Assembly (NCBI GenBank): GCA_002269645.1
Contig: NIVC01004674.1
Location: 1 to 38,427, forward strand
Length of the DNA: 38,427 bases
DNA from: Macrostomum lignano
Taxonomy: Eukaryota
Reading direction: 5' to 3'
The notes under the pieces were generated by a model, which did no database searches, was not told the origin of the DNA, and was given only the letters and a program-made list of their open reading frames with translations. Shown here in pieces: positions 1-25,773 of the stretch (the stretch's first letter is position 1; each line of letters begins with the position of its first letter). The position numbers were made by a program, and so were the translations under genes.

Positions 1-271
1 GGTTTGGGTAGGGTTTAGATAGCTTGGTTAGGTAGGGTTTAGATAGGGCTTGGTTAGGGGGTTTAGATAGGGCTTGGTTAGGGTAGGGTTTAGATAGGGC
101 TTGGTTAGGGTAGGGTTTAGATAGGGCTTGGTTAGGGTAGGGTTTAGATAGGGCTTGGTTAGGGTAGGGTTTAGATAGGGCATGGTTAGGGTAGGGTTTA
201 GATAGGGCTTGGTTAGGGTAGGGTTTAGATAGGGCTTGGTTTGGGTAGGGTTTAGTTGCGGCTTGGTTAGG
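1..271 (+). repeat. 27-bp G-rich minisatellite containing TTAGGG/TAGGG motifs (runs off window start)
   Basis: Unit TAGGGTTTAGATAGGGCTTGGTTAGGG, ~10 copies; explains the KPYLNPTLT periodic ORF. Confidence 0.95.
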
Positions 272-703
272 GGCATAATCGTCGTGTACTTTCAATGCGA
301 CTTAGAACGAAACTTGAAGTACATGGTCGAAATGATACTAAATGAAGAGCGATTCATTGCCCATAGTCAACAATTTCGGATGATGTATAAAACCTTAAGT
401 TTGAGAAAGAAACAGAAGAAACGTTTTTAACTCTACCTCGCGGCCTCTCAAGTTATAAACGAGGTGGCAGAAGCTGTTGTTTAAGGCGCATGGCAGACGT
501 TCATCGTCAGATTGACCTGCTCGAACACCTCGTTTATTCTCTCGGCAGTGTTCACCTTGTCCTAGTGGTGGCACTGGATTTTGACGGCGGGAGTCGATTG
601 GCCGACGGCGCTTCTGGCCATGGCGAGCGCCAGAGCGACGGTCAGAACGAGCTGCAGCGGGACCGGCTTCTCCATCAGGCTGAGGAGTTCTTGAGTTGAT
701 GAG
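250..703 (-). pseudogene. Possible disrupted gene for a small secreted protein, or a terminal TM exon of the upstream cadherin-like gene
   Basis: Acceptor ctatttggcag| at 704. ATG at 675 gives MEKPVPLQLVLTVALALAMARSAVGQSTPAVKIQCHH* (TAG 562-564). Coding-like GC-rich sequence continues past the stop (DKVNTAERINEVFEQVNLTMNVCHAP) with further stops and frameshifts. No family recognised. Confidence 0.3.
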
Positions 704-935
704 CTGCCAAATAGCACCCCAAATGCGGGATTAATATTGCTGAGTACAAGCCTGGCTTTGCGGGAATTGATCGAATTGTCTATGGCCCAAACAGGTGTAC
801 TCTTAATGATTGGCCATTAAGTAAAGTAACATTTCACGGTAGACCAGACGACATTTATGACCTCTAAAACCTTGCGTAAATTATTTTGCAAAACTACTCT
901 CTGTTCAATGTATCAGCGTAAAAAACAATTCATAG

Positions 936-1082
936 ACATACACTATAACATACACTTTAACATACACTATAACATACACTATAACATACACTATAACATA
1001 CACTATAACATACACTATAACATACACTATAACATACACTATAACATACACTATAACATACACTATAACATACACTATACAA
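936..1082 (+). repeat. 12-bp minisatellite (ACATACACTATA)n
   Basis: ~12 near-perfect copies. Confidence 0.95.
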
Positions 1083-1239
1083 ACTACGTATAGTGTAGTT
1101 TAGGCTTTTTAAAAAATGCATTTTAAAGTGCCTTCAGAGAGATGCAATATACCTATAAGATTGAAATCTATGATAGTAGACATCCATAAAATGATCCACT
1201 ACATGTATTGTATTCGCCAAGTACAAACGAAAAAATTTG

Positions 1240-1388
1240 TCGCAAACGGACATTTTATCTGCTCAGACAATTTTATGCGCCAACGGACGATTTTATGCGC
1301 CAATGGACAATTTTATCCACCAATGGGCAATTTTATGCGCCAATGGACAATTTTATCCGCCAATGGACATTTTATGCGCTCAGACAAT
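1240..1388 (+). repeat. 20-bp minisatellite (ATTTTATGCGCCAATGGACA)n
   Basis: ~7 diverged copies. Confidence 0.9.
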
Positions 1389-1769
1389 TAAAGTATACAA
1401 TTAAAAGAATCTACGAAAGGAATTCGTAGAAAGCTACACGAAAGCTAGCAGGTAAAACTTGTGTCCGATTATTGCTACGCACTAATCAGTGACGTCATCG
1501 GAAGAGTGTATTTTCGGTGCATTGGAGGGCGAATTTGACGATGAAAAATTGGCTGTCTCAGTTGCTGATTTAAATCTGGATTTTCGACTTTGCTACTGAT
1601 AGTAGTTGGAGAGCGTCTGCGGTTATCGGGGGCATTCAGAGTATTGGTGTTGAAAACAAAAAGCGCATTATGCAGGTCAATATTCCGAGTGGCATTTAAA
1701 AATCTATTAAAGTACAAGTTGTCAGTAATTAAGGCCAGTAATTAGCTGGGGGTTCAGCGCGTCAAGTCT

Positions 1770-4700
1770 TCACTGGCAGATTTTCCACTTGCCGCCGACT
1801 TTCACACAGGCGCCGCCGGCGTTCGGGCAACGAATGCCGAGCCGAGTGCATGGGTTGTCGGACGGCGCGGCGCAGCTGCCGCCGGAGCGCTTGAAGCCGG
1901 GCAGGCAGGCGCAGGTCTTGGCGCCCCAGACGCCTTCGCAGGACTCGGTGGCCTTGTTGCAGCTGCAGGCCGGCGCCGGGTCCTTGCAGTCCGCGGCCGC
2001 CTTCACTCCGCTGGACGAGTACGTCACCTTCACGGACGTCGAGCTGTCGTCCATGGTCGAGTCGGCCGAGCTGGTGGGCATGTACACGTCCGACACGCGA
2101 AGGCCGGTGATGCAGCCTTGGGGGGGGGGGGCGACGGGAGACATGAGCTGCCGTTTTCAGCACCGAAAGGAACTGGAGGATGGGGAACTGGAGGATGGGG
2201 AACTGGAGGATGGGGAACTGGAGGATGGGGAACTGGAGGATGGGGACGAATGGGGAACTGGAGGATGGGGAACTGGAGGATGGGGAACTGGAGGATGGGG
2301 AACTGGAGGATGGGGAACTGGAGGATGGGAACTGGAGGATGGGGAACTGGAGGATGGGGAACTGGAGGATGGGGAACTGGAGGATGGGGAACTGGAGGAT
2401 GGGGAACTGGAGGATGGGGAACTGGAGGATGGGGAACTGGAGGATGGGGAACTGGAGGATGGGGAACTGGAGGATGGGGAACTGGAGGATGGGGAACTGG
2501 AGGATGGGGAACTGGAGGATGGGGAACTGGAGGATGGGGAACTGGAGGATGGGGAACTGGAGGATGGGGAACTGGAGGATGGGGAATTCGAGGATGGGGA
2601 ATTTGACGATGCAGCTCCATTAAAATGAGATCAAGTACAGTTGGCCATGATTCAACGACAAGCCTGCCAGGTGCTACTAGAAGACAAAGCCCTGGGGCGG
2701 GCCAAGCCACTCACTGCTGGGCAGATTCATGCTGACTTTGAAGGAGTTCACGAGAATCTCCCCGGGGAGCAGGTGCACCTGCGAATATTCGTCAACTGCA
2801 AGGAAGAGCTGCGACTTGGCCGTGGACACCAGGACCTCGTGCCAGTGGCCGTCGCTGACCACTTTGGGGACGAAGGGCCGGCAGCTCGAGTCGATGCAGA
2901 ATTGCAGGGTCTCAGACTCCAGCTGCAGTTTGGGCGATTAACTTATTGCAGTGTGGGATATGCAGTGTGGGATATGCAGTGTGGGGTATGCAGTGTGGGA
3001 TATGCAGTGTGGGATATACAGTGTGGGATATGCAGTGTGGGATATGCAGTGTGGGATATGCAAGTGTGGGATATGCAGTGTGGGATATTCAGTGTGGGAT
3101 ACGCAGTGTGGGAAAACTAATATGTAGCAGTCTTGCCTTCAGCTCGAATCGGGAGGCTCCTGAGCCAGTGCTTTCAATCGTCAGCAGCTGAGTGGCGGTG
3201 GCAACTCTGGTGCGGAACCGGAGTCGCAGGCCCAGCGGCGAAGCGATCCGCAGGGGGATGTTGGAGCCGCTGCTCAGCGTCCAGCTGATGCCAATGTCGC
3301 TGGCGGCCGTGTTCAGGATAAGCAGCTCTGAGGGTGGCGGTGTGGCAGGCGGCTGGACACTGGCACAAACAGGGGCACAAACGGGAACTAGAGACACCAT
3401 GGACATCAGAGACACCATGGACATCAGGGACACCAGAGACATCAGAGACATCAGAGACACCATAGAAATTAGGGACACCAGGGACACCATAGACACCAGG
3501 GACATCAGAGACATCAGGGACACCAGAGACATCAGGGACACCAGAGACATCAGAGACATCAGAGACACCATAGAAATCAGGGACACCAGGGACACCATAG
3601 ACACCAGGGACATCAGAGACATCAGGGACACCAGAGACATCAGGGACACCAGAGACATCAGGGACACCAGAGACATCAGGGACACCAGAGACACGTAGGA
3701 AATCAGGGACACCAGAGACATCAGGGACACCAGAGACACGTAGGAAACCAGGGACACCAGAGACACGTAGGAAACCAGGGACACCAGAGACACCAGGGAC
3801 ACCATAGACACCAGGGACACCATAGACATCAGAGACATCAGGGACACCAGAGACATCAGGGACACCAGAGAAATCAGGGACACCAGAGACATCAGGGACA
3901 CCAAAGACAACAGGGACACCAGAGACATCAGGGGCACCAGAGACATCAGGGACACCATAGACATCAGGGACACCAGAGACATCAGAGACATCAGAGACAC
4001 CAGAGACACCATAGACATCAGAGACACCAGAGACATCAGAGACACCAGGGACACCATAGACATCAGAGACACCAGGGACACCAGAGACATCAGGGACACC
4101 AGAGACATCAGAGACACCATAGACATCAGAGACATCAGGGACACCAGAGACACCAGCGACACCATAGATATCAGAGACACCAGGGACACCAGAGACACCA
4201 GGGACACCATAGACCTCAGAGACACCAGAGACATCAGGGACACCAGAGACATCAGAGACACCAGAGACACCAGAGACATCAGAGACACCAGAGACATCAG
4301 AGACACCAGAGACATCAGAGACACCAGAGACATCAGAGACACCAGGGAACATCAGGGACACCAGAGACACCAGAGACACCATAGACATCAGAGACAGGGA
4401 CACCATAGACATCAGGGACATCAGGGACACCAGAGACACCAGGGACACCAGAGAAATCAGGGACACCAAAGACATCAGAGACACCAGGGACACCAGAGAC
4501 ATCAGGGACACCAAAGACAACAGGGACACAAGAGACATCAGAGACACCAGGGACACCAGAGACATCAGGGACACCATAGACATCAGAGACACCAGGGACA
4601 CCAGAGACATCAGGGACACCAGAGACATCAGAGACACCATAGACATCAGAGACATCAGGGACACCAGAGACACCAGAGACACCATAGACATCAGAGACAC

Positions 4701-7700
4701 CAGAGACATCAGGGACACCAGAGACATCAGAGACACCATAGACATCAGAGACACCAGGGACACCAGAGACATCAGAGACACCAGAGAAATCAGAGACACC
4801 AGGGAACATCAGGGACACCAGAGACACCAGAGACACCATATACATCAGAGACACCAGGGACACCATAGACATCAGGGACATCAGGGACACCAGAGACACC
4901 AGGGACACCAGAGAAATCAGGGACACCAGAGACATCAGGGACACCAAAGACAACAGGGACACCAGAGACATCAGGGACACCAGGGACACCATAGACATCA
5001 GGGACACCATAGACACCAGGGACACCATAGACATCAGAGACATCAGGGACACCAGAGACATCAGGGACACCAGAGACATCAGGGACACCAGAGACACCAG
5101 GGACACCAGAGACACCAGGGACACCAGAGACACCAGGGACACCAGAGACATCAGGGACACCAGAGACATCAGGGACACCAGGGACACCAGAGACACCAGG
5201 GACACCAGAGACACCAGAGACATCAGAGACACCAGAGACATCAGAGACACCAGGGAACATCAGGGACACCAGAGACACCAGGGACACCATAGACATCAGG
5301 GACACCAGAGACACCAGAGACATCAGAGACACCAGGGACATCAGGGACACCATAGACATCAGGGACATCAGGGACACCATAGACATCAGGGACACCAGAG
5401 ACACCAGAGACATCAGAGACACCAGGGACATCAGGGACACCGTAGACATCAGGGACACCAGAGACACCAGAGACATCAGAGACACCAGGGACACCAGAGA
5501 CATCAGAGACACCAGGGACATCAGGGACACCATAGACATCAGGGACACCAGAGACATCAGAGACATCAGATACACCAGGGACATCAGGGACACCATAGAC
5601 ATCAGGGACACCAGAGACATCAGAGACATCAGAGACACCAGGGACATCAGGGACACCATAGACATCAGGGACACCAGAGACATCAGAGACATCAGAGACA
5701 CCAGGGACATCAGGGATATCAATCAGCAGGGCTGCTGCTCACCCTTGCTGCAGGAGGCGGCGCACATTGCGGGGTCGCTGATTTTCTCATTAGTCATCCT
5801 GGTCTGGCCGGAGCAGCGGCACTGGCACAGATCCTTGCGGACGACCCCGAGGAAGCCGTAGCACACGGACTTGTCGCCGCAGAGGTAGCCGGTCTCCGAG
5901 CCGCCGCAGGAGGCGTCCTGCTGGCTGCATTTCTCGGAAGTTTTCGCAATCGGGCCGTTGTGGCCGTCCACCTTCAGGTCAACCAGCCGGTTGTTGAGCC
6001 GCACGTTACGGAAGCAGCCATTGAAGGAGCCGCCGAGTAGGACAGTGGTGCTGCTGAGAGCGAAGTCACCGGACAAGGTGCTCTCGGCCGTCTGCTGGAT
6101 GCACTCGAAGCCCGGCTCCACCGTGCAGAACACCGTGACAGTCTGGCAGCACCGGGGGGAATTGATCCGGTGTATCCAATTATAGCTGATTTATTTATTT
6201 CAACAGGGCGTAGCTCGACATAAGAGTGCCCAACTCGAGATAGATATGAGTGCCCAACTCGACATAAGAGTGCCCAACTCGAGATAGATATGAGTGCCCA
6301 ACTCGACATAAGAGTGCCCAACTCGAGATAGATATGAGTGCCCAACTCGACATAAGAGTGCCCAACTCGAGATAGATAGGAGTGCCCAACTCGAGATAGA
6401 TATGAGTGCCCAACTCGACATAAGAGTGCCCAACTCGAGATAGATATGAGTGCCCAACTCGACATAAGAGTGCCCAACTCGAGATAGATATGAGTGCCCA
6501 ACTCGACATAAGAGTGCCCAACTCGAGATAGATAGGAGTGCCCAACTCGAGATAGATATGAGTGCCCAACTCGACATAAGAGTGCCCAACTCGAGATAGA
6601 TAGGAGTGCCCAACTCGACATAAGAGTGCCCAACTCGAGATAGATAGGAGTGCCCAACTCGAGATAGATATGAGTGCCCAACTCGACATAAGAGTGCCCA
6701 ACTCGAGATAGATAGGAGTGCCCAACTCGAGATAGATATGAGTGCCCAACTCGACATAAGAGTGCCCAACTCGAGATAGATAGGAGTGCCCAACTCGAGA
6801 TAGATATGAGTGCCCAACTCGAGATGGATAGGAGTGCCCAACTCGAGATAGATATGAGTGCCCAACTCGAGATAGATATGAGTGCCCAACTCCAGATAGA
6901 TATGAGTGCCCAACTCGAGATAGATAGGAGTGCCCAACTCGAGATAGATAGGAGTGCCAACTCGAGATGGATAGGAGTGCCCAACTCGAGATAGATATGA
7001 GTGCCCAACTCGAGATAGATATGAGTGCCCAACTCGAGATAGATATGAGTGCCCAACTCCAGATAGATATGAGTGCCCAACTCGAGATAGATAGGAGTGC
7101 CCAACTCGAGATAGATAGGAGTGCCAACTCGAGATGGATAGGAGTGCCCAACTCGAGATGGATATGAGTGCCCAACTCGAGATAGATAGGAGTGCCCAAC
7201 TCGAGATAGATAGGAGTGCCAACTCGAGATGGATTGGAGTGCCCAACTCGAGATGGATATGAGTGCCCAACTCGAGATAGATATGAGTGCCCAACTCGAG
7301 ATAGATATGAGTGCCCAACTCCAGATAGATATGAGTGCCCAACTCGAGATAGATACGAGTGCCCAACTCCAGATAGATACGAGTGCCCACCTCCAGATAG
7401 ATAAGAGTGCCCAACTCGAGATAGATAGGAGTGCCCAACTCGAGATAGATATGAGTGCCCAACTCGAGATAGATAGGAGTGCCCAACTCGAGATGGATAG
7501 GAGTGCCCAACTCGAGATAGATAGGAGTGCCCAACTCGAGATAGATAGGAGTGCCCAACTCGAGATAGATAAGAGTGCCCAACTCCAGATAGATAAGAGT
7601 GCCCAACTCGAGATAGATAGGAGTGGAGTGCCCAACTCGAGATAGATAGGAGTGCCCAACTCGAGATGGATAGGAGTGCCCAACTCGAGATAGATAAGAG

Positions 7701-10700
7701 TGCCCAACTCGAGATAGATAGGAGTGGAGTGCCCAACTCGAGATGGATAGGAGTGCCCAACTCGAGATGGATAGGAGTGCCCAACTCGAGATAGATAGGA
7801 GTGGAGTGCCCAACTCGAGATGGATAGGAGTGCCCAGCTCGAGATAGATAGGAGTGGAGTGCCCAACTCGAGATGGATAGGAGTGCCCAGCTCGAGATAG
7901 ATAGGAGTGGAGTGCCCAACTCGAGATGGATAGGAGTGCCCAGCTCAAGATGTATACGAGTGCCTAACTTCTTAGCAGCAGGAGATTCTCCCAAAGAAAC
8001 TCGGTGGAACTCACGGTGAGTTTGCTGCGCCGCTCAGCTTGGCCACAATGGTGACATCCATCCAGAGCCCCTGCTGCACGAATCTGTTGGAGTGCAGCGC
8101 GGTCTGGGTGAACTCGGGCTCCATGCTAGGCACGGTGGCGGTGGTGTACAGCGGTTCGGGCACTCGGCCTAGCTGGACATTGACCAGATCTTTGGACTTA
8201 GACACCAGGGTGACAATGGTGCACAGGTTCCCGTCCGGATTCATGCACCTGCCGGCGAATTTGAATTTCAGCGTCAGCATGTCCGGCCGGCCGGCTCTGT
8301 TCGGCACCAGGTGATGGGTTGTGATGGCGTCGCTGCCGGTGCCGCCGTTGTAGCCGCGGGTCAGCAGCTCGCAGTTGGGCCCGCGAACCTCGTTCTTGAC
8401 TTCGGAGGAGGAGCACTCGCAGCTGCGGGACAGCGGGAGGGGCGCAGGCTCGGAGCTCCTGAATTCGCCTCCCGAATCCTTTGGTTTCTTGGAATTCGCA
8501 CTGCCCGAATTCAATTCAGAAACAGTCTCCACAAAACGATTTTAAGGAATGAACGCCAAAAATTCGATTTCTTAGAATCCACATCTCAAATTCGATTTCT
8601 TAGAATCCACATCTCAAATTCGATTTCTTAGAATCCACATCTCAAATTCTATTTCTTAGAATCCACATCTTAAATTCGATTTCTTAGAATCCACCCCTCA
8701 AATTCGATTTCTTAGAATCCACCCCTCAAATTCGATTTCTTAGAATCCACATCTTAAATTCGATTTCTTAGAATCCACCCCTCAAATTCGATGTCTTAGA
8801 ATCCACATCTCAAATTCTATTTCTTAGAATCCACATCTCAAATTCTATTTCTTAGAATCCACATCCTAAATTCTATTTCTTAGAATCCACATCTCAAATT
8901 CGATTTCTTAGAATCCACATCTAAAATTCGATTTCTTAGAATCCACCCCTCAAATTCGATTTCTTAGAATCCACATCTCAAATTCGATTTCTCAGAATCC
9001 ACCCTCAAATTCGATTTCTCAGAATCCACCCCTCAAATTCGATTTCTCAGAATCCACCCCTCAAATTCGATGTCTTAGAATCCACATCTCAAATTCGATT
9101 TCTTAGAATCCACCCCTCAAATTCGATTTCTTAGAATCCACATCTCAAATTCTATTTCTTAGAATCCACCCCTCAAATTCTATTTCTTAGAATCCACATC
9201 TCAAATTCTATTTCTCAGAATCCACCCCTCAAATTCGATTTCTTAGAATCCACATCACAAATTCGATTTCTCAGAATCCACCCCTCAAATTCGATGTCTT
9301 AGAATCCACATCTCAAATTCTATTTCTTAGAATCCACATCTCAAATTCTATTTCTTAGAATCCACCCCTCAAATTCTATTTCTTAGAATCCAACCCTCAA
9401 ATTCGATTTCTCAGAATCCACCCCTAAATTTCGATTTCTTAGAATCCACGTCTTAAATTCGATGTCTTAGAATCCACCCCTCAAATTCGATTTCTTAGAA
9501 TCCACATCTCAAATTCGATTTCTTAGAATCCACCCCTCAAATTCTATTTCTTAGAATCCAACCCTCAAATTCGATTTCTTAGAATCCACCCCTCAAATTC
9601 TATTTCTTAGAATCCACATTTCAAATTCGATTTCTTAGAATCCACATTTCAAATTCGATTTCTTAGAATCCACCCCTCAAATTCTATTTCTTAGAATCCA
9701 CATCTCAAATTCTATTTCTTAGAATCCACCCCTCAAATTCGATTTCTTAGAATCCACATCTCAAATTCGATTTCTCAGAATCCACCCCTCAAATTCGATT
9801 TCTTAGAATCCACATCTCAAATTCTATTTCTTAGAATCCACCCCTCAAATTCTATTTTTTAGAATCCAACCCTCAAATTCGATTTCTTAGAATCCACATC
9901 TAAAATTCTATTTCTTAGAATCCACCCCTCAATTTCGATTTCTTAGAATCCACCCCTCAAATTCGATTTCTTACAATCCACATCTCAAATTCTATTTCTC
10001 AGAATCCACCCCTCAAATTCGATTTCTTAGAATCCCTTTACTTCAAATGTGATTTCTTAGAACTTCCTCCCGAATTCGATTTCCCAGCCACTCACGGGCC
10101 GTAGCTTGGCACATCAAAGCTGGTCTTGCATTTTCCCGGGGCAGCGCAGGTCTTGGAATTGCAGGACCCCTGCAGGTCCTTAAAGGCGTCCTTGCCGCAC
10201 CGCGTTTCCCACTTGGTCGGCATGCCCAGGACGGCCTTGTCGTCCGCACTCTTGACGCTGCCAAGCTCCGCGAAGCCCTTCGAAGAGTCGTGCACCAGCA
10301 CCGATCTGCAGAATGTCTTGCACGTTGAGTAGCAGTCCTTCTCGCCGTCGACTGCGACTCCTACTTCCTGCGTGTGTGGGGAAGACGGTGTCAGCGAGAG
10401 CCTCTGTCCCACTTAATCCTTCCGCGGGAACCGCTGTCCCACCTGATTCTTCAGAGAGAGCCGCTGTCCCACCTGATCCTTCAGCGAGAGCTGCTGTCCC
10501 ACCTGATATTTCAGGGGGAGCTGCTGTCCCACCTGATCCTTCAGCGGGAGCCGCTGTCCCACCTGATCCTTCAGCGGGAGCCGCTGTCCCACCTGATCCT
10601 TCAGGGGGAGCCGCTGTCCCACCTGATCCTTCAGCGAGAGCCGCTGTCCCACCTGATCCTTCAGGGGGAGCCGCTGTCCCACCTGATCCTTCAGCGGGAG

Positions 10701-10944
10701 CCGCTGCCCTCCGCTCCTTCTACTACCGCAGTTGCAGCGAATGCAGGAGAGAATTTTCAATATGCTACTACAAGTAACAAACCGAGCACATGGTTTACCT
10801 TTGCATTGTTCCTGATGATCGTCTCAGCCTTGTCTTTGGGAATCAGGTTGCCCGAGCCGTCGTATAGCAAGATGCCGGTGCCGCCGGGGCCGCCGGAGCT
10901 GCCGGAGCTGCCGGAGCCGCCGGAGCTGCCGGAGCCGCCGGAGC

Positions 10945-10984
<40 letters not shown>

Positions 10985-12433
10985 CGCATTGCTGGTAGCA
11001 ACCGTGGCCGTGTAACCAGAATCCTTAAGCTTTTTCAGGAGATTCTTGACCTTGTCGCTTTCACCTGCAGGAGCGTGAAACAGAGCCGAGAGGCATTGAG
11101 ATGGCCTTATAAGAGGCGGCCTTATAAAATTTTATGAACGTCTGAAAATCAAAAATATTCTACTGGCCAAATCAATTCGTACCATTGACAACAACCGTCT
11201 GGGGGAGATCTGTGGGGCTGACCTTGTTGACATTGATGGTGCCCTTGAAGATGACGATTTTACCGTCGGGGCCCTTGCCGATGACCGTGAAAGGCACGTC
11301 GCAGTTGGGCAGGGCGCCTCGGTAGGCCAGCTTGTTTTTCGGCGAGCTGGACTCGTCACCGAGCAGCAGGTGCGGCAGCGGCGAGGTGATGCTGAGTATC
11401 TCGGTCACCGAGGGGAATGTGATGTAGCCGAACCCGTCCTTGAAGTTGGCGTCTGTCGGATCAAATTTCCGGCATTATTTCATGAATTCAAGTGGCTTCG
11501 GTTTGGTTGAATTCGAGCATTATTAACTATAGGGCTTAGTTATGGTATGAGAAATTTGAGTTTTTCTAATTTTATTTAACTGCTTCGAGCTTCTATCATT
11601 AACTTTCAACTAGAGAATCGTGCTATTAAAAGATTGCCTAGTCAAAACTGTACTGCATGCTTAAACCACTCTCAGTTAAAGTCCAAATCTGATGGGAATT
11701 ACATGTACATGTATACTGATCTTACCGACTATTGTTGGGAAGTACTGGTTAGTCTGAATGAGTGCTCAACAGTGTTTATCAGTTCTAATCAGTGTTCATC
11801 AGTGCTCATCAGTCCTCATCAATGCTCATCAATGCTCATCAGTGCTCATCAGTGTTGCTCAGTGCTAATCAGTGCTCATCAATGTTCATCAGTGCTCATC
11901 AGTGTTGCTCAGTGCTAATCAGTGCTCATCAATGCTCATCAGTGCTCATCAGTGTTGCTCAGTGCTTATCAGTGCTCATCAATGCTCATCAGTGCTCATC
12001 AGTGTTGCTCAGTGCTAATCAGTGCTCATCAATGCTCATCAGTGCTCATCAGTGTTGCTCAGTGCTTATCAGTGCTCATCAATGCTCATCAGTGTTGCTC
12101 AAGTGCTAATCAGTGCTCATCAGTGCTCATCAGTGATCATCAGTGCTCATCAACGTTCATCAGTGTTCATCTGTGCTTATCAGTGCTATTCGGGATTCAT
12201 CTGTGCTCACCAGTGTTCCACAATACAGAAGTTGCTGGATCAAGCTGTTTTGATTGGATGGACATCATATAGCTCACCTGCACAACGACTCATACGAGCT
12301 CGTAGGATGAGTAGATAATAAAAAACTCACCAGCGGGGCCGTTAACGTTCACGGAAAAGTCAGCGCCAACAAGAGCCACCGCAGCCGCAGCCAACAGAAG
12401 TCTGGCCAGAGTGCAGCGCCGATCTCCCAGCAT
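1770..12433 (-). CDS. Secreted-type EGF/laminin-G protein resembling the membrane-proximal region of non-chordate (type III, DN-cadherin-like) classical cadherins, ~820-835 aa, 9 exons
   Basis: Exons: 12433-12331 (signal peptide MLGDRRCTLARLLLAAAAVALVGA; in-frame TGA just upstream), 11452-11183, 11064-10799, 10367-10096, 8422-8015, 6142-5743, 3327-3137, 2922-2715, 2116-1770. Phases agree at 7 of 8 junctions; exon 5/6 is off by 1 nt. Intron 7 is GC-AG. Motifs: EGF CNSKTC..CK..CEC..GPNCE; LamG LLGGSFNGCFRNVRLNNRLVDL; LRFRTR; VVSDGHWHEV; SCITGLRV; C-terminal EGFs. These match recalled DN-cadherin motifs (GFDGCIRNLVHNSKLYDL, QLRFRTR, VVNDGQWHVV, SCLDDIRL). Confidence 0.8.
2168..2608 (+). repeat. 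15-bp minisatellite (GGGGAACTGGAGGAT)n in intron 8
   Basis: ~29 almost identical copies. Confidence 0.97.
2947..3113 (+). repeat. 14-bp minisatellite (GCAGTGTGGGATAT)n in intron 7
   Basis: ~12 copies. Confidence 0.95.
3388..5718 (+). repeat. 9/18-bp minisatellite (GACACCAGA/GACATCAGG family) in intron 6, with ~455-bp higher-order blocks
   Basis: ~2.3 kb of 9-mer variants; the rare variant ACCAGGGAACATC recurs at 4341, 4798 and 5249. Confidence 0.97.
6205..7960 (+). repeat. 20/24/29-bp minisatellite (GAGTGCCCAACTCGAGATAGATAT family) in intron 5
   Basis: Core GAGTGCCCAACTC repeated for ~1.75 kb. Confidence 0.97.
8560..10075 (+). repeat. 28-bp minisatellite (AAATTCGATTTCTTAGAATCCACATCTC)n in intron 4
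   Basis: ~54 copies. Confidence 0.97.
10405..10708 (+). repeat. 30-bp minisatellite in intron 3
   Basis: Unit GCCGCTGTCCCACCTGATCCTTCAGCGGGA, ~10 copies. Confidence 0.95.
11760..12215 (+). repeat. 10-bp minisatellite (CAGTGCTCAT)n in intron 1
   Basis: ~45 decamers. Confidence 0.95.
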
Positions 12434-12999
12434 GTCTTCCCGACAGACTCACTGCAGTTATTATTCGCCGAAAAAGTTTTCTCTATACTCAGATTTCTGA
12501 CTATTAAACTGTCAACATGAAGCGGGCAGAGTTGCATAGATAACAAGTGAAGTCTCCAGTGGACCGGGCTGATCGCTGCGATATGCATGCAGTATCTCTC
12601 TCTGGCGGTACAGGCAGGCGTCTTGGCCACAGACTGCTGCTGCGGGGCTGCTGCCATAGACAGTTCAGAACTGCTGCCCTAAGATAGCCGAGCTGAATAA
12701 AAAAGTGCATGGGGAATCTACACGAGTGTACATGTATCACTTTTATAGCTCTCTCGACTATATTTAACACGCCGGCTCTAATGTACTTTAGTCTGCCATG
12801 CCAATTTACGAGCGTACATAAATCGCATTGATTGTTATTGACACGAGATTGCCACACCAAATAAACCATTGAAAGCGGCGCCTTTCATTGTTGTACTCGT
12901 AGCTTTGGCTCTAAGTGTATTAAACTACTTGTACGAATAGCACAGTATAAGCACGAAAGAACAAATATCAAATGGAACTGATGCACGTGAATGTAAATA

Positions 13000-13885
13000 C
13001 TGATGAGTACTAAATGAACAATGATGAGTACAGATGAGCACAGATGAATGTTGATGAGCACCAATGAGCACATATGAGCACAAATGAATGTTGATGAGCA
13101 CCAATGAGCACAGATGAATGTTCATGAGCGCAGATGAGCACAGATGAATGCTCATGAGCACAGATGAGCACAGATGAATGTTGATGAGCACCAATGAGCA
13201 CAGATGAATGTTCATGAGCGCAGATGAGCACAGATGAATGCTCATGAGCACAGATGAGCACAGATGAATGTTGATGAGCACCAATGAGCACAGATGAATG
13301 TTCATGAGCACAGATGAGCACAGATGAATGTTCATGAGCACAGATGAGCACAGATGAATGTTCATGAGCACAGATGAGCACAGATGAATGTTCATGAGCA
13401 CAGATGAGCACAGATGAATGTTCATGAGCACAGATGAGCACAGATGAATGTTCATGAGCACAGATGAGCACAGATGAATGTTCATGAGCACAGATGAGCA
13501 CAAATGAGCACAGATGAGCACAGATGAATGTTCATGAGCACAAATGAGCACAGATGAATGTTCATGAGCACAGATGAGCACAGATGAATGTTCATGAGCA
13601 CAAATGAGCACAGATGAATGTTCATGAGCACAGATGAGCACAAATGAATTTTCATGAGCACAGATGAGCACAGATGAATGTTCATGAGCACAGATGAGCA
13701 CAGATGAATGTTCATGAGCACAGATGAGCACAGATGAATGTTCATGAGCACAGATGAGCACAGATGAATGTTCATGAGCACAGATGAGCACAGATGAATG
13801 TTCATGAGCACAGATGAGCACAGATAAATGTTGATGAGCACCAATGAGCACAGATGAGTGGCATATGAGTACAGATAAGCACAGA
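13000..13885 (-). repeat. 10-bp minisatellite (CTGTGCTCAT family on - strand, 30-bp higher order), inverted relative to 11760-12215
   Basis: + strand GATGAGCACA/GATGAATGTT/CATGAGCACA; its reverse complement matches the intron-1 decamer. Confidence 0.93.
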
Positions 13886-14274
13886 GACTGTGGCAGAATA
13901 AATATTGGGCTGCAAAAGAAAAGCAAGCCAATGATTGAACAAGTCACGATTTTGATTTGCAGTTCACGAGAGTTGCTGCAGCAGTTGGTCTCACAGCACA
14001 GCTTACAAAGAGTGAGGACAGCAGCTGCTGGGCTTCCAATTCGATTTATTTTCATTAATTCATTCGGTGCCAGTCAGCAGGCAGGTAAATTTTATGGGTC
14101 AGGTAGGTTTGAACAAAGCAAACCAGTTTATGACATCGACTGCAGCCGCAGGGGCTGGGGCAGGGGTCGGGGAGTGGACACAAAACAGCTACCAACGACA
14201 AGAGCATGCAAACATGTAAGGATAAATTTTAGATAATGGCTAAGGCTGACTGACTGGTTTGCACAGGAATTTGC

Positions 14275-14640
14275 ACAGCAATCCGCCATCCTTAACCTGC
14301 ATATAGATTAGCAATCCACCATCCCTAATCTGCACATAGATTAGCAATCCACTATCCGTAATCCGCACGGATTAGCAATCCACCAACCATAATCCGCACG
14401 GATTAGCAATCCACCAACCATAATCCGCACGGATTAGCAATCCACCAACCATAATCCGCACGGATTAGCAATCCACCATCCCTAATCTGCACATAGATTA
14501 GCAATCCACCATTCCTAATCTGCACATAGATTAGCAATTCACCAGCCCTAATCCACACGGATTAGCAATCCACCAGGCCTAATCTGCACACAGATTAGCA
14601 ATCCACCAGCCCTAATCCGCAGGGATTAGCAGTAATCCGC
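14275..14640. repeat. 31-bp minisatellite with internal hairpin, immediately 3' of the WDR53 stop
   Basis: Unit GGATTAGCAATCCACCAACCATAATCCGCAC; unit junctions form (C)TAATCC-GCAC-GGATTA(G). Confidence 0.93.
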
Positions 14641-14664
14641 AGCCAGCAGACGGCACGCAGGCGG

Positions 14665-17256
14665 TCAGGCGGCAGCGGACAGGTCGCAGCAGTGGACGGT
14701 GCTGCCGGAGTCGGCCACGAACACGCGGTCAGGCCGGGTGCCGCAGAGGGCGTTCACCTTGTCGCTGTGGGCGAAGGACGCGCCGGCCTGCTCGGAGTCC
14801 AGCGCCCACAAATAGCAGCGCCGGTCGTTGCCGCCGGACAGCAGCAGGTGGCCGGGCAGGCACAGCAGGGCGCTGACACCGGCCGAGTGTCCGTAGAGGC
14901 TCTCAGACTGCAGCAGGTGGCGGCCGGAGCCGCTGAACAATTCCACGGAGCCGTTCTCCAGGCCGGCTGCCACGAACTGCCCGTCGGAGCTGGCGGCCAG
15001 GCAGTGCACCAGCGGCGGGTTCACGCCGATGCCGCTGGCTGACACCGTCGACTCGGCGTCCTGCAGCTCGCTCATGTCGAATATGTTGACGGCCTCGCCG
15101 CGGTGGCCCTTCCAGTCGGTGACAACCAGGCGATAGTCCATGCCGCCTGAGATCACCTGCGGGAGGGGGACGGCGTGTGAAATGCTGAGATCCCCGGGAT
15201 GTTGATGTTGATCCCGCTGAGATCTCCGTGATCTTGATATTGATCCCGCTGAGATCTCCGTGATCTTGATATTGATCCCGCTGAGATCTCCGTGATCTTG
15301 ATGTTGATCCCGCTGAGATCCAGAATCCAGGGATGTTGATATTGATTCTGCTGAGATCCAGAATCCAGGGGATGTTGATGTTGATCCCGCTGAGATCCAG
15401 AATCCAGGGATGTTGATATTGATTCTGCTGAGATCCAGAATCCAGGGATGTTAATATTGATTCTGCTGAGATCCAGAATCCAGGGGATGTTGATGTTGAT
15501 TCCGCTGAGATCCCAGGGATGTTGATATTGATTCCGCTGAGATCCAGAATCCAGGGGATGTTGATGTTGATTCTGCTGAGATCCCAGGGATATTGATATT
15601 GATCCCGCTGAGATCTCCGTGATCTTGATATTGATCCCGCTGAGATCCCAGGGATGTTGACATTGATCCCGCTGAGATCCCAATAAAGTGAAGTGAAACA
15701 AAGGTGGCTGAAATCCCGGGCCCAAACGACTCACCTGCCAGGTGCGGGTTGGCCGGAAGATCACAGCCGATGCGATGTTGTCGTGCTTGTGCAGGGCGCG
15801 CACCAGCTCGCCGCTGACGGCGTCGAAGATTTTCACGGCGCCAGTGTCGTCAGCCGTGGCCAGCCGCCGCTCCTCCTCCAGCAGGGCCACCGAGTTCACC
15901 TCGTCTTCGGCTGCGCAGATGGACAGCAGCGGCTGTGCCGGGCTGCGCAGGTCCCAGGCGTGCACCGCGCTGCCCTGCAGGCAGGGAGAGGACACGGGCG
16001 CGGTGTGGTATCACTCCATAGTGTGGCATCACTTCATAGTGTGGGATCACTCCATAGTGTGGTATCACTCCATAGTGTGGGATCACCTCATAGTGTGGGA
16101 TCACCTCATAGTGTGGGATCACTCCATAGTGTGGGATCACTCCATAGTGTGGGATCACCCCATAGTGTGGGATCACTCCATAGTGTGGGATCACCCCATA
16201 GTGTGGGATCACTCCATAGTGTGGGATCACTTCATAGTGTGGGATCACTCCATAGTGTGGGATCACCTCATAGTGTGGGATCACTCCATAGTGTGGGATC
16301 ACTCCATAGTGTGGGATCACTCCATAGTGTGGGATCACCCCATAGTGTGGGATCACCCCATAGTGTGGGATCACTCCATAGTGTGGGATCACTTTATAGT
16401 GTGGGATCACTTTATAGTGTGGCATCACTTTATAGTGTGGGATCACTCCATAGTGTGGGATCACTTTATAGTGTGGCATCACTTTATAGTGTGGGATCAC
16501 TCCATAGTGTGGGATCACTCCATACTGTGGGATCACTTCATAGTGTGGGATCACTCCATAGTGTGGGATCACTCCATAGTGTGGGATCACTCCATAGTGT
16601 GGGATCACTCCATAGTGTGGGATCACTCCATAGTGTGGGATCACTCCATAGTGTGGGATCACCCCATAGTGTGGGATCACTCCATAGTGTGGGATCACTT
16701 TATAGTGTGGCATCACTTTTTAGTGTGGGATCACCCCATAGTGTGGGATCACTCCATAGTGTGGGATCACTCCATAGTGTGGGATCACTCCATAGAGTGG
16801 GATCACATCATAGAGTGGGATCACTCCATAGTGTGGGATCACTCCATAGTGTGGGATCACTCCATAGTGTGGGATCACTCCATAGTGTGGGATCACTCCA
16901 TAGTGTGGGATCACTCCATAGTGTGGGATCACTCCATAGTGTGGGATCACTCCATAGTGTGGGATCACTCCATAGTGTGGGATCACCATAGTGTGGGATC
17001 ACCCCAGTACCTGAGCGGCAAACAGCAGCCGACCGGAGGCAAAGCCGGGCGATGAGAACGCCAGCGATACAACGGGAGCGCCGGTGGGGCCGCCGCACTG
17101 CCACTTGGCAGTCAGGAGGCGCTGGCCGGCGTCCCATAAGCAGATGGCGGCGTCGTCGGCCCCGGAGGCCAGCAGGCTGGAGTCGTGGTCCAGCGCCAGG
17201 CAGTTCACGGATGCGGAGTGGCCGTTGGCCAGAGCGGATGATGCAGAGGTGGCCAT
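14665..17256 (-). CDS. WDR53: WD repeat-containing protein 53, 325 aa, 3 exons
   Basis: Exons 17256-17011, 15974-15735, 15156-14665, all phase 0 with GT-AG. WD40 motifs GHSASVNCL..LASGADD..ICLWD and KHDNIASAV; VISGGMD; VNPPLVHCL; GHSAGVS..LLSGGNDR; KVN..VFVAD. These match recalled WDR53. Confidence 0.88.
15187..15680 (+). repeat. Complex 25-39-bp minisatellite (GATCCCGCTGAGATC core) in WDR53 intron 2
   Basis: Repeated TTGATATTGATCCCGCTGAGATC variants. Confidence 0.92.
16003..17005 (+). repeat. 18-bp minisatellite (ATAGTGTGGGATCACTCC)n filling WDR53 intron 1
   Basis: ~55 copies. Confidence 0.97.
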
Positions 17257-17359: not shown

Positions 17360-19311
17360 TCAGCGGACATGGCGATTTAAGCTGCGAGCGCGATGGTTGA
17401 ACGCGTAGAAGCTGGGCCGGTTGATGTTGTCCCAGACTCTGCAAGTGCAGGTGCATGATTCATCAGCTTAGTCAGGTTGTTTGTGTTAGGGTAAACGGCG
17501 GGAGTAACTATTACTCTGGTCTAAACAACAACCTATGCCTCGTCATCTAATCAGTAGTTATTTAACCTTCCGCAGCTGAACTGCTCACTTGTTCTCAGGC
17601 TCGGCAGCAGCAAATATCACTCTGAAGTCGCCAGCAATGTTAACAATGCCAATGCAGACAATGGCAAAGCCTAGCAGGCACTCGATGGCAATGTCCAGTG
17701 GCAGCTGCTCAAATTCCTCTTCACTAAGTCGCAGGATGCGGCGATCTGTTGTGAGGCCAGGAAAAGGCAGGAAAGCAACATTAAATGGCCAGCTTTGGCT
17801 GCAGACTCTTCTAAAGCATGAAGAAAATTGTTGCACAAATTAAACATTTTATTTGGATAGCTAAAATTCAATGCAAATTTTGCTGTAATCCAGCACACTA
17901 TAACAAATGAAAACAATGCAAAATAAACCATTGACTAAGCATTTAATTATTACATATTTGGTATCTACTAGAAAAACAACTATTGCCCCTATGAATTATT
18001 ATAAAAAAATGCATGCATGGCTCATAACTGGGACTATGGAATTTAGGCCTCTATCTAAGAGCCCTTGTGTTGCTTCCTCCCAATGTTGTCACTTAAGCTT
18101 GAGTAACTATTTGCATAGGAAGATCAAATTTGCATAGCCAAGCCTATCTTTTTGGATTCATAAGTTGGTATGGCATATTTTTTATGCAATAAAAGAGCTT
18201 TTTGCAAACTTTTCATTGAAGATATCCCTATGCAGATATCTCTTGTACCAAAATATAATAATTGGTTTTTAAAGTTTTCTACTAGAAATGAACTATTTCA
18301 TGCTAATAATATATAGGCAATTAGCTTGCTATAATAGACTAGAGGATGGAATATCAGGTAAAGTTAGAATGGAATATAAAGGTTATATTATAAGGTGGAA
18401 TATATGACATGGATTATAGGGTTGATAATTGTCTCATTTATGCAGAAAAAGAAATTAGAAAATTTGTATAGTTTATAAAATTTGCCTAATGGCAATATTC
18501 CCCACTCCTAAATATATATTTCTTTTATAGTACCTGATTTTCGATCAAATGGTACAAGTTTAAAGAAAATTGGTTGAGCCATTTTTTCTAAAAACAATCA
18601 CATAGCTAGATAGCTATATGCAAACAACTAATTTTTAGTATATAAGACTACTATACAATTTCACTAAGTCATTTTTATTTTATTATACACTTGATATCAT
18701 TGAGACTAGGCCTATACTAGAAATCATGTCATGTAAAATATACTGATATGGTAGAAAGCATACATCATGGCCATATTAAAAAACGATTTGCAATATATTC
18801 TAGTGTGCATCTAACATGATCCAGAATATTGGAGTATCCAAACTCTGGAATATTGTCATATAACTAAAAATCTAGATTTTTACTTAGAATTGTGAAGTTT
18901 TTATTAAAAATATAATGATTTTTTTAATTTTGTGTTTACTTACTATTTCCACTATGAACTTCTTATGGAGACAAAAAACAGTGGCAGATATAGGATTTTA
19001 TTTTTTTAAAGTAGTGGGGCAGATTGGCCTAACTTTTTTGGTTGGCCCAAAATAACCCCTAAAAATAGGACCTAAATAAGCCCGACATAGCAGCCCTAAG
19101 ACTTAGACCTCTACATATCATTAAGGTAGGAATATAAAGTCACATTACTATTACAAACAAAGTTAAAAAATTGAATTTCACGAATGTCAGATTGTTACAA
19201 TTACAATACAATACTGTACCACAATAACTCACGCTGTGCGGCGGAATAGGCTGAATGTAGGAGAAGTATAGCACCAACTAAAGTAGCAAACCTGCCATAA
19301 GTAAATGTCAT
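17360..19311 (-). CDS. MMGT1: ER membrane protein complex subunit 5 / membrane magnesium transporter 1, 104 aa, 3 exons
   Basis: Exons 19311-19233 (MTFTYGRFATLVGAILLLHSAYSAAQ), 17745-17589 (HRRILRL..LPLDIAIECLLGF..IAGDF), 17438-17360 (KVWDNINRPSFYAFNHRAR). Phases 1 and 2 are consistent. Hallmarks H.A.SAAQH, LP.DI, RPSF..FNHR. A splice acceptor (ttttgctatag) lies 3 nt before the ATG. Confidence 0.92.
17489..17555 (-). other. Bipartite 28S rRNA-derived segment, antisense on the EMC5 pre-mRNA (candidate intronic guide RNA or rDNA fragment)
   Basis: + strand 17489-17517 GGGTAAACGGCGGGAGTAACTATTACTCT and 17535-17555 ATGCCTCGTCATCTAATCAGT each differ by one base from the conserved eukaryotic LSU sequence GGGTAAACGGCGGGAGTAACTATGACTCTCTTAAGGTAGCCAAATGCCTCGTCATCTAATTAGT. 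The central CTTAAGGTAGCCAA is replaced by GGTCTAAACAACAACCT. Confidence 0.85.
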
Positions 19312-25509: not shown

Positions 25510-25773
25510 ATGCGGTTGTCATCCGCCTGCCGCTCCGCCTGCTGCTGCTGCGGCCTCGGCCGGCGGGCCCGCCATCGTTTGGCTGGCGGTGCCGACTTTG
25601 TCCGGCGACACCTGGCCTTCGCCCTGGCCCCGGCCGCCTGCCTGCTGGCCGTGGAATCCGGCGGGCTCGTAGCCTTCGCAGTGCTGCTGCTGGGAGCGCT
25701 GCTGGGCCTCCTCAGCCTCGAGGCCTACCTGGTCTACTGCAGGAATGAGCCTCCCGAGTCCAGGTGTGACAGA

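What the first reader, a model, noticed from the sequence alone, without database searches (positions are those of the whole stretch)
1770..12433. A 'cadherin without cadherin repeats': signal peptide fused to the NC-EGF-LamG-EGF-LamG-EGF module
Motif order and residues follow the membrane-proximal region of DN-cadherin-type classical cadherins (KEVGVAVDGEKDC..C...C, CEC..GPNCE..RGYNG, FNGCFRNVRLNN, LRFRTR, SDGHWHEV, SCITGLRV). The signal peptide comes only ~90 aa (at most one degenerate EC repeat) before the NC region. An in-frame stop just upstream of the ATG argues against more N-terminal exons. No TM or catenin-binding tail follows. This suggests a secreted cadherin derivative, for example a matrix, mucus or adhesive component, or a soluble modulator.
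Basis: partly seen in the sequence, partly recalled or inferred. Interest (0 to 1): 0.7.

Follow-up and report, generated by a model that had tools for sequence, protein, structure and literature searches.

The report
Flatworm cadherin-like protein lacking cadherin repeats

Summary
A minus-strand gene runs from the ATG at 12433 to the stop at 1770, and every quoted motif is there. A 2.7-kb transcript contig from a related animal (P0002/L001) is collinear over the whole length at 46% identity. It starts with the same signal peptide after an in-frame stop and ends at the same "...CQ*", so no cadherin-repeat exons are missing upstream.

Cadherin ancestry is plausible but not proven. Profile comparison with six type III cadherins gives one collinear alignment (E 2e-15). 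With fair comparators, though, the LamG-EGF-LamG core scores best against CELSR1, then DN-cadherin, and neurexin falls within the cadherin range. Only the Cys-rich stretch before the first EGF is specific to classical cadherins (anchored z 7.7). The N-terminal 200 aa match nothing, and Pfam Ig_Shg, Cadherin and Cadherin_C are not hit.

"No TM follows" is probably wrong. The stop after CQ overlaps a phase-2 donor, and a tenth exon (679-562) is in phase. That exon has the gene's GC3 signature (85%) and encodes a hydrophobic helix plus a 17-aa tail. One 1-nt frame conflict sits at the exon 5/6 junction.

Verdict: a new variant of a known kind, of moderate interest.

The parts
12331..12433 (-). 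Exon 1: start codon and signal peptide (MLGDRRCTLARLLLAAAAVALVGA|DFSVNVNGP). The donor is CTG|gtgagt, phase 1.
   Evidence: The h-region has a Kyte-Doolittle mean of 2.7. In-frame stops lie upstream. The N-terminus is conserved with P0002.
11183..11452 (-). Exon 2: N-terminal domain of about 90 aa with no detectable family. No cadherin repeat is detectable.
   Evidence: Pfam gives no hit at E<=10. hhalign against the EC-like first half of cadherin NC gives z 0.9, and permuting that block changes the score by 0.1. The region is conserved with P0002.
10799..11064 (-). Exon 3: helix-strand-strand-helix segment interrupted by a 36-aa Gly/Ser run. The run is encoded by a GGCGGCTCC-type microsatellite (10874-10984) and is absent from the homologue.
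   Evidence: This is the only part of the single-sequence AF2 model of P0002 with moderate confidence (pLDDT 60-74, residues 139-197). There is no significant similarity to the second half of cadherin NC.
10096..10367 (-). Exon 4: 'EVGVAVDGEKD' followed by the Cys-rich N-part of a CE1-like module (C-x3-C-x3-C ... AVLGM ... CGKDAF) and the first half of EGF 1.
   Evidence: In the anchored permutation test this block adds 14 hhalign score units (z 7.7). On its own it gives E 1e-3 and is the best match in its row and column of the domain matrix. A type III HMM aligns this region of P0002 at 26.8 bits.
8015..8422 (-). Exon 5: second half of EGF 1 (CEC...GPNCE), the 'LLTRGYNG' start of LamG 1 and most of LamG 1. 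The donor is CACC|gtgagt, phase 2.
   Evidence: Against type III cadherins the EGF1 block (CE1 row) gives z 13 and LG1 gives z 9.7. A full HMMER scan of 1.84 billion proteins with this exon found only P0002.
5743..6142 (-). Exon 6: C-terminal part of LamG 1 (Cys loop VFC...EC, FNGCFRNVRLNNRLVDL) and the Cys-rich CE2-like linker. The homologue supports the acceptor cag|ACT, which is phase 0 and conflicts by 1 nt with exon 5. An upstream acceptor at 6185 would restore the frame but insert 14 aa that the homologue lacks.
   Evidence: The canonical join runs into a stop at codon 496.
3137..3327 (-). Exon 7: start of LamG 2 (LRLRFRTR...), ending at a GC-AG intron (AAG|gcaaga).
   Evidence: Gap-free collinearity with P0002 across the junction supports the GC donor. 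The UniProt model used an upstream GT and so deleted 23 conserved residues.
2715..2922 (-). Exon 8: middle of LamG 2 (SDGHWHEV).
   Evidence: Pfam Laminin_G_2 E 1.7e-9 to 7e-10. LG2 against cadherin LG2 scores 48, compared with 28 against LG1.
1770..2116 (-). Exon 9: end of LamG 2 (SCITGLRV) and a CE3-like region made of one EGF-like module plus the first four Cys of a second. The exon ends at 1774 if the donor CA|gtgaag is used. If it is not, the CDS ends at TGA 1772-1770.
   Evidence: The homologous mRNA ends at the same residue with TAG. Exons 4 and 5 have the same 'N|G TGA G' phase-2 donor pattern.
562..679 (-). Candidate exon 10. It is in phase with the exon 9 donor and encodes H-LMEKPVPLQLVLTVALALAMARSAVGQSTPAVKIQCHH-stop, which is a TM-like helix plus a 17-aa basic tail.
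   Evidence: The region has a GC spike of 63-64% within flanks of 26-45% GC. Codon-position GC is 0.68/0.43/0.85 in this frame only, matching exons 1-9 (GC3 0.80-0.87). It is the only non-repeat GC3-rich open segment outside exons 1-9 on this strand. Kyte-Doolittle means are 1.96 over 17 residues and 1.72 over 19. The acceptor is ctcctcag|C. The UniProt model makes the same exon 9 to exon 10 join.
533..538 (-). AATAAA, the only canonical poly(A) signal between the exon 9 stop and the window start. It lies 24 nt after the exon 10 stop.

Best explanation
The locus is a genuine 10-exon gene of the flatworm Macrostomum lignano. It encodes an extracellular protein of about 820-860 aa. In order, the protein has a cleavable signal peptide and about 200 aa with no recognisable family, including a microsatellite-encoded Gly/Ser linker. 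Then come a Cys-rich segment plus EGF (CE1-like), LamG 1, a Cys-rich linker (CE2-like), LamG 2 and one and a half EGF-like modules (CE3-like).

The message then ends in one of two ways. It may stop right after '...KICQ', giving the secreted form, which is the form seen in the related species' mRNA. Alternatively, a phase-2 donor overlapping that stop splices to a tenth exon, which adds a single transmembrane helix and a 17-aa stub.

The protein has no cadherin repeats and no catenin-binding domain, so it cannot be a classical adhesion receptor coupled to actin. The most likely origin (inferred) is the membrane-proximal module of a cadherin-superfamily protein, most probably a type III classical cadherin, after loss of the EC repeats and the cytoplasmic domain.

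The most likely mode of action (inferred, untested) is binding of a partner by the LamG/EGF module at the cell surface or in the matrix. This is what the EC-less amphioxus cadherins Bb1C/Bb2C do homophilically, but here there is no cytoskeletal link. The choice of splice would decide whether the product is tethered or soluble.
For: Gene reality and completeness: the splice model is, and the full-length 46% collinear homologue comes from an mRNA contig with an upstream in-frame stop and a stop after CQ. No other coding-like segments lie on this strand from 1 to 15000, and the neighbouring WD40 gene ends 2.2 kb upstream.

Organism: exact peptide matches to UniProt A0A1I8FRV8 of M. lignano.

Lack of EC repeats and cytoplasmic domain.

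Relation to cadherins: a collinear hhalign alignment to six type III cadherins covers 706 columns at probability 98.5%, E 2e-15. Per-domain z-scores are EGF1 13, LG1 9.7, LG2 7.1 and CE3 4.5. LG1 matches LG1 and LG2 matches LG2 better than the cross pairs. The N-part of CE1, which lies inside the region covered by Pfam Ig_Shg in real cadherins, gives anchored z 7.7. The best core scores are with CELSR1 (72.9) and DN-cadherin (60.7). The 'TRSF/TRGY' start of LG1 and a Cys-bounded loop in LG1 are shared with type III cadherins and CELSR1 but not with neurexin (read directly).

TM exon.

Precedent that an EC-less LamG/EGF ectodomain can mediate adhesion: Oda et al. 2002 and 2004, as summarised in PMC3216324.
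Against: Single-sequence and HMM-level searches do not single out cadherins. Exon 5 hit no cadherin among 1.84 billion proteins. The family profile scores DN-cadherin at 20.6 bits and the other cadherins at 2-9 bits, against 23.6 bits for laminin alpha-2 LG.

A real type III LG1-CE2-LG2 region matches neurexin at 184 bits and CELSR1 at 73 bits. That is far better than it matches this protein. Neurexin cassettes score 33-37 in hhalign, which is within the range of four of the six cadherins.

The NC region and the N-terminal domain show no similarity, and Pfam Ig_Shg is not hit.

Only two family members are known, so the profile is thin, and the AF2 model was unusable (mean pLDDT 36).

The exon 5/6 frame conflict leaves open that this copy is defective. 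There is no RNA evidence from M. lignano itself for either C-terminus. Function is entirely inferred.
Confidence: 0.55

Rival explanations
1. The protein is not cadherin-derived. It is a fast-evolving, macrostomid-specific member of the general LamG-EGF-LamG cassette proteins (neurexin, CELSR, Crumbs, agrin type), and the resemblance to the cadherin membrane-proximal region only reflects that shared cassette.
For: The core scores best with CELSR1, and neurexin cassettes fall within the cadherin range. HMMER bits do not separate cadherins from laminin. The cadherin LG region is itself strongly neurexin-like. NC is undetectable and Ig_Shg is not hit. The 'C.d.W....C.C..GF' motif of CE3 also occurs in neurexin and CELSR1 EGFs.
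Against: The N-part of CE1 contributes significantly and is the best match in its row and column. That region of a real cadherin has no PDB relative once its EGF is removed. There is a single EGF before LG1, as in type III cadherins, whereas CELSR1 has three. The TRSF motif and the LG1 Cys loop are shared with cadherin-superfamily members but not with neurexin. The domain matrix is diagonal-dominant.
Confidence: 0.3
2. One reading: the protein is strictly secreted, the CDS ends at TGA 1772-1770, and the block at 679-562 is not part of this message.
For: The related species' mRNA ends with TAG right after CQ, followed by 196 nt with no TM-like ORF. Termination at the same residue in two proteins of 46% identity suggests an old, conserved C-terminus.
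Against: The block at 679-562 has exon-type GC and GC3 periodicity only in the frame that is in phase with the exon 9 donor. Exons 4 and 5 also end in 'G TGA G' at bona fide phase-2 donors, so the TGA is not evidence of termination. The only AATAAA lies 24 nt after the exon 10 stop and 1.2 kb after the exon 9 stop.
Confidence: 0.35
3. This particular copy is a decaying paralogue (pseudogene), because the homologue-supported exon 5/6 join shifts the frame.
For: The canonical join gives a stop at codon 496. The M. lignano genome carries near-identical extra copies, and the UniProt model comes from a copy or assembly with several frame shifts.
Against: All ten exons are otherwise open. All Cys residues are conserved with the homologue, and GC3 is 80-87% throughout. 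A single 1-nt discrepancy at one junction is also what a long-read assembly indel would give, and an upstream acceptor at 6185 keeps the frame.
Confidence: 0.15

Closest known systems
Amphioxus Bb1C/Bb2C cadherins (Oda et al. 2002, 2004; reviewed in PMC3216324)
   Same: The extracellular region is made of LamG and EGF-like domains, is related to the type III cadherin membrane-proximal region, and has no cadherin repeats at all. They also show that such an ectodomain can bind on its own.
   Different: Bb1C/Bb2C keep a highly conserved catenin-binding cytoplasmic domain and localise to adherens junctions. The flatworm protein has at most a 17-aa tail and may also be secreted.
Type III classical cadherins (DN-cadherin, Sm1/Sm2, Ea2, Pt1/Pt2): NC-CE1-LG1-CE2-LG2-CE3 module
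   Same: Domain order is collinear from CE1 to CE3. The N-part of CE1, EGF1, LG1, LG2 and CE3 are each significantly similar, and LG1 and LG2 show positional correspondence. There is one EGF before LG1 and a 'TRSF'-type LG1 start.
   Different: The flatworm protein has no EC repeats, no detectable NC/Ig_Shg domain and one Cys fewer in CE1-N. The second EGF of CE3 is cut after its fourth Cys, and there is no Cadherin_C. Divergence is so great that Pfam LamG models score 40 bits, against 141 bits for a real cadherin.
CELSR/Flamingo LamG1-EGF-LamG2 region (PDB 8vy2, CELSR1)
   Same: It gives the highest hhalign score for the LamG-EGF-LamG core (72.9, E 9e-10). It shares the 'STRSF' start and the Cys-bounded loop in LamG1.
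   Different: CELSR has three EGFs before LamG1, and HormR/GAIN/7TM domains after the cassette. It shows no counterpart of CE1-N in the test available.
Neurexin LNS-EGF-LNS cassettes
   Same: The same cassette logic applies. hhalign scores are 33-37, within the range of several cadherins.
   Different: Neurexin has no TRSF motif, no LG1 Cys loop and no CE1-like Cys-rich segment, and it is a neuronal presynaptic receptor with a PDZ-binding tail.

Membership tests
Classical cadherin (type III/IV) | Tandem extracellular cadherin (EC) repeats with Ca2+-binding linkers | tested here: not met
   Pfam finds no Cadherin at E<=10 on the full model or the N-terminal region. tblastn with 640 aa of Sm2 EC repeats finds only noise in the window. 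The homologous mRNA is complete at its 5' end and has none.
Classical cadherin (type III/IV) | Catenin-binding cytoplasmic domain (Pfam Cadherin_C) | tested here: not met
   tblastn with the Sm2 and Ea2 TM+CP regions gives no hit better than E 2.7. Pfam finds none in the model, in P0002 or in the longer UniProt model P0001. Both candidate CDS ends lie inside the window.
Classical cadherin (type III/IV) | NC / 'Ig_Shg' domain (PF24811) between the last EC and CE1 | tested here: not met
   PF24811 hits Sm2 at E 1e-40 but neither flatworm protein at E<=10. hhalign gives z<1 for both halves of NC. Only the CE1 N-part that overlaps the end of that region is similar.
Classical cadherin (type III/IV) | CE1-LG1-CE2-LG2-CE3 order of EGF-like and LamG domains next to the membrane | tested here: met
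   One collinear hhalign alignment covers 706 columns at E 2e-15, and the domain matrix is diagonal-dominant. The feature is not exclusive, because CELSR1 and neurexin cassettes also align.
Classical cadherin (type III/IV) | Single-pass transmembrane segment after CE3 | tested here: inconclusive
   Candidate exon 10 (679-562) has a coding signature and a hydrophobic 17-19-mer. The homologous mRNA, however, stops before any TM, and no M. lignano cDNA was available.
EC-less cadherins of amphioxus (Bb1C/Bb2C type) | LamG/EGF ectodomain without EC repeats plus a conserved catenin-binding tail | tested here: not met
   The ectodomain criterion is met. The tail criterion is not.
LamG-domain extracellular proteins (Pfam Laminin_G_2) | A LamG/LNS domain scoring above the Pfam gathering threshold | tested here: met
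   LG2 hits PF02210 at 38.7-39.8 bits, above the cutoff of 22.9. LG1 is recognised only by profile-profile comparison.

The most novel reading that the evidence does not exclude
A classical cadherin was stripped down in macrostomid flatworms to its membrane-proximal LamG/EGF module. A stop codon overlapping a splice donor now lets one gene make either a soluble or a membrane-tethered, catenin-independent form. This would be a second, independent proof, after amphioxus, that this module is an autonomous binding unit, and a natural soluble modulator of cadherin-type adhesion.
Probability: 0.2. Interest if true: 0.7.

Novelty: new variant of a known kind. Interest (0 to 1): 0.45.

Why it matters
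Type III cadherins are thought to be the ancestral bilaterian form. What their large non-EC membrane-proximal module does is still poorly understood. The amphioxus EC-less cadherins are the only natural case showing that the module can bind by itself.

A flatworm protein made of essentially that module alone would be a second natural experiment. It has no EC repeats and no catenin link, it may occur in tethered and soluble forms, and M. lignano has RNAi and transgenesis. If the cadherin ancestry fails, what remains is an ordinary, lineage-restricted LamG/EGF surface protein.

Tried and rejected
(1) My first guess was amphioxus Bb1C/Bb2C. I rejected it because the only database match is a Macrostomum lignano UniProt entry with exact peptide identity.

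(2) The word-indexed protein search with the full model returned nothing, because the Gly/Ser run swamped the candidate list. Without the linker it found only the poor UniProt model. The profile search found only P0002.

(3) The UniProt model A0A1I8FRV8 is not a usable guide. It reads exon 9 and exon 10 partly out of frame, skips 23 conserved residues of exon 7, and continues into 470 aa without any domain. Its exon 10 frame (GARHGQKRRRP...) has a GC3 of only 0.43, so it is not the coding frame.

(4) I built model A with the upstream acceptor at 6185 to keep the frame. I then set it aside because the homologue lacks those 14 residues.

(5) Structure prediction of P0002 as a single sequence gave a mean pLDDT of 36, so I ran no fold search. 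Spliced window sequences are not accepted by the structure and representative-search tools.

(6) Exact-match look-ups of window ORFs for exons 5 and 9 in public assemblies found nothing, so there is no second genomic copy or downstream flank to inspect.

(7) I initially read the hhalign E-value of 2e-15 as proof of cadherin ancestry. I downgraded it after adding CELSR1 and neurexin comparators and after HMMER-level scoring.

(8) I checked whether CELSR1 has a counterpart of NC/CE1-N. The apparent hit was due to EGF repeats only.

(9) Literature searches for Macrostomum plus cadherin, and for the SRA run of the homologue, gave nothing relevant.

Full report
**What is in the sequence**

The window is eukaryotic, with short GC-rich exons and introns full of minisatellites. 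On the minus strand, open segments joined by canonical splice sites run from an ATG at 12433 to a TGA at 1772-1770. Three in-frame stops lie within 60 nt upstream of the ATG.

The exons are 12433-12331, 11452-11183, 11064-10799, 10367-10096, 8422-8015, 6142-5743, 3327-3137, 2922-2715 and 2116-1774(1770). Intron 7 is a GC-AG intron.

**Organism and independent support**

The only hit in the word-indexed 5.8-billion-protein search was UniProt A0A1I8FRV8, a "LAM_G_DOMAIN" protein of the flatworm Macrostomum lignano. It shares long exact peptides with exons 7-9 but is a frame-shifted, mis-spliced model.

An exhaustive HMMER scan of 1.84 billion representatives with exon 5 found one true relative, P0002 (E 3e-21). 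P0002 is a 797-aa ORF on a 2698-nt Logan contig from run SRR30276812. A contig that carries 2394 nt of uninterrupted CDS must be a transcript.

P0002 aligns with the window's product from the signal peptide to the last residue at 46% identity, with all cysteines conserved. The transcript has an in-frame stop 27 nt before its ATG and a TAG immediately after "...KWQVCQ".

This independently shows three things about the related species' message. It starts with the signal peptide, it has no EC-repeat exons, and at least one mRNA form ends right after the CE3-like region. Within the window the next gene on the same strand, a WD40 protein, ends only 2.2 kb upstream. A scan for GC3-rich open segments finds no further exon-like blocks upstream.

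**Gene-model details that matter**

- The homologue lacks the 36-aa Gly/Ser run of exon 3, which is encoded by a GGCGGCTCC-type microsatellite at 10874-10984.
- The homologue supports the junction "...AANSP|TVTVFC". Exon 5 ends in phase 2 at a strong donor, while the matching acceptor (first base 6142) requires phase 0.
- The canonical join therefore frameshifts to a stop at codon 496. An upstream acceptor at 6185 keeps the frame but inserts 14 residues that the homologue lacks.
- Three readings remain open: a 1-nt assembly indel, use of the odd acceptor, or a defective copy. Everything else is intact.

**The C-terminus**

The TGA after CQ is part of "CA|GTGAAG". Exons 4 and 5 end in the same "N|G TGA G" pattern at bona fide phase-2 donors, so this TGA does not by itself mark the end of the CDS.

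About 1.1 kb downstream there is a 120-nt block at 63-64% GC within flanks of 26-45% GC. It is preceded by ctcctcag| and is in phase with that donor. Its codon-position GC is 0.68/0.43/0.85 in that frame only, the same signature as exons 1-9 (GC3 0.80-0.87). Control segments have GC3 of 0.35-0.48. It is the only non-repeat coding-like segment on this strand outside exons 1-9.

The block encodes H-LMEKPVPLQLVLTVALALAMARSAVGQSTPAVKIQCHH-stop. This contains a hydrophobic 17-19-mer (Kyte-Doolittle 1.96 and 1.72) with basic residues on the C-terminal side. The only AATAAA in the 1.77 kb downstream of exon 9 lies 24 nt after this stop.

I conclude that a membrane-tethered isoform is likely in M. lignano. 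The read-through (secreted) form, the one seen in the related species, remains possible. Neither form has a catenin-binding domain. tblastn with two real cadherin TM+cytoplasmic regions and with 640 aa of EC repeats finds nothing in the window, and Pfam finds no Cadherin or Cadherin_C anywhere.

**Is it cadherin-derived?**

I took real type III sequences from the supplement of Sasaki et al. 2017 (PMC5473995). Sm1, Sm2 and Ea2 came as plain text, and DN, Pt1 and Pt2 came from an OCR'd figure, together with the authors' NC/CE/LG boundaries.

*Evidence in favour:*
- Profile-profile comparison of the two-member flatworm family with these six sequences gives one collinear alignment of 706 columns from just after the last EC to CE3 (probability 98.5%, E 2e-15).
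- Column-permutation controls give z-scores of 13 for EGF1, 9.7 for LG1, 7.1 for LG2, 4.5 for CE3, 1.5 for CE2, and below 1 for the N-terminal domain and for NC.
- In an anchored test, permuting only the Cys-rich N-part of CE1 (C..C...C ... ALVG ... CG.RDF) lowers the score by 14 units (z 7.7). Permuting either half of NC changes nothing.
- The domain-by-domain matrix is diagonal-dominant: LG1-LG1 scores 35 against 21, LG2-LG2 scores 48 against 28, and CE1N-CE1N scores 19.9 against at most 13.

*Controls that weaken the claim:*
- A real type III LG1-CE2-LG2 matches neurexin-1α at 184 bits and CELSR1 at 73 bits in the PDB.
- I rebuilt the CELSR1 and neurexin cassettes from those alignments and scored all templates as single sequences over the same span. 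The flatworm core scores 72.9 with CELSR1, then 60.7 with DN, 48.5 with Ea2 and 40.6 with Pt2. The two neurexin cassettes give 37.4 and 33.5, and Sm2, Sm1 and Pt1 give 33.4, 32.4 and 27.1.
- At HMMER level the family profile gives DN 20.6 bits and the other cadherins 2-9 bits, against 23.6 bits for laminin α2 LG.
- Pfam has a family for the NC/CE1-N region of classical cadherins (PF24811 Ig_Shg). It hits Sm2 at 1e-40 and does not hit the flatworm proteins.
- The NC/CE1-N region of a real cadherin has no PDB relative once its EGF is removed. CE1-N is therefore specific to classical cadherins as far as I could test.

By direct inspection, the "TRSF/TRGY" start of LG1 and a Cys-bounded loop inside LG1 are shared by type III cadherins, CELSR1 and the flatworm proteins, and are absent from neurexin.

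*Net assessment:* the LamG-EGF-LamG core is of the cadherin-superfamily kind, with fair support. Descent from a classical type III cadherin specifically rests on CE1-N and on the single-EGF architecture, which is moderate support. The N-terminal 200 aa are unexplained.

**Mechanism**

The shown facts are the signal peptide, the extracellular EGF/LamG architecture, the absence of EC repeats and a catenin-binding tail, and the candidate TM exon.

The inferred part is that the protein binds a partner through its LamG/EGF module at the cell surface or in the matrix. The EC-less amphioxus cadherins Bb1C/Bb2C do this homophilically (PMC3216324), but here there is no link to catenins. The splice choice at the stop-overlapping donor would give a tethered or a soluble form. 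Tissue, ligand and phenotype are unknown.

**Comparison and novelty**

The protein is not a cadherin by definition, because two defining features were tested and not met. It resembles Bb1C/Bb2C in having a repeat-less LamG/EGF ectodomain and differs from them in lacking the cytoplasmic domain. No paper in the library describes it, and it exists in databases only as an uncharacterised automatic entry.

I rate it a new variant of a known kind, with interest 0.45. The architecture is real and unusual and is testable in a tractable flatworm. The cadherin ancestry is only moderately supported and nothing is known about function.

Noticed in passing
window 2169-2601, 2947-3113, 3390-5721, 6220-7969, 8560-10062, 10391-10720, 11761-12187; also 936-1079 and 13024-13885: Seven of the gene's eight confirmed introns (all but the short intron 2) carry their own long minisatellite array, each with a different unit of 10-63 bp and up to 129 copies over 2.3 kb. 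Candidate intron 9 (936-1079) and the upstream intergenic region (13024-13885) carry one too. ORFs in other parts of the window show similar repeat translations.
   Followed up: partly
window 10874-10984 (minus strand, inside exon 3): An in-frame GGCGGCTCC-type microsatellite encodes a 36-aa Gly/Ser linker that the 46%-identical homologue lacks. It appears to be a recent coding repeat expansion inside a folded region.
   Followed up: partly
window 8013-8016 and 6142-6185: There is a 1-nt phase conflict between exon 5 (phase-2 donor) and the homologue-supported exon 6 acceptor. An upstream acceptor at 6185 would restore the frame at the cost of a 14-aa insertion.
   Followed up: partly
window 3135-3136 (minus strand): Intron 7 uses a GC donor (AAG|gcaaga). 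The public UniProt model avoided it with an upstream GT and so lost 23 conserved residues.
   Followed up: yes
UniProt A0A1I8FRV8 (P0001) versus window 560-3330: The public M. lignano model for this gene family reads parts of exons 9 and 10 in the wrong frames and runs on into about 470 aa without any domain. It probably comes from an indel-rich assembly or a damaged paralogue.
   Followed up: partly
window 1-272: A 27-bp tandem repeat (10 copies) is built from telomere-like TTAGGG/TAGGG units (8 and 25 occurrences). It is an interstitial telomere-like array at the edge of the window.
   Followed up: no
window 14665-17256 (-), 17585-17836 (-), 21298-21858 (+), 25258-27624 (+), 32740-35285 (-): The neighbouring genes are a WD40-repeat protein, an MMgT-like membrane protein fragment, a small P-loop kinase (AAA_33/SKI-like), an alpha/beta-hydrolase with a TDRQ-repeat insertion, and a MAP-kinase-like protein kinase. 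All are split by minisatellite-rich introns.
   Followed up: partly
L001 1-2698 (Logan SRR30276812 contig): This is the only other member of the family among about 15 billion proteins, from an unidentified organism. At 46% identity it is presumably another macrostomorph flatworm, and I could not trace the run to a paper.
   Followed up: partly
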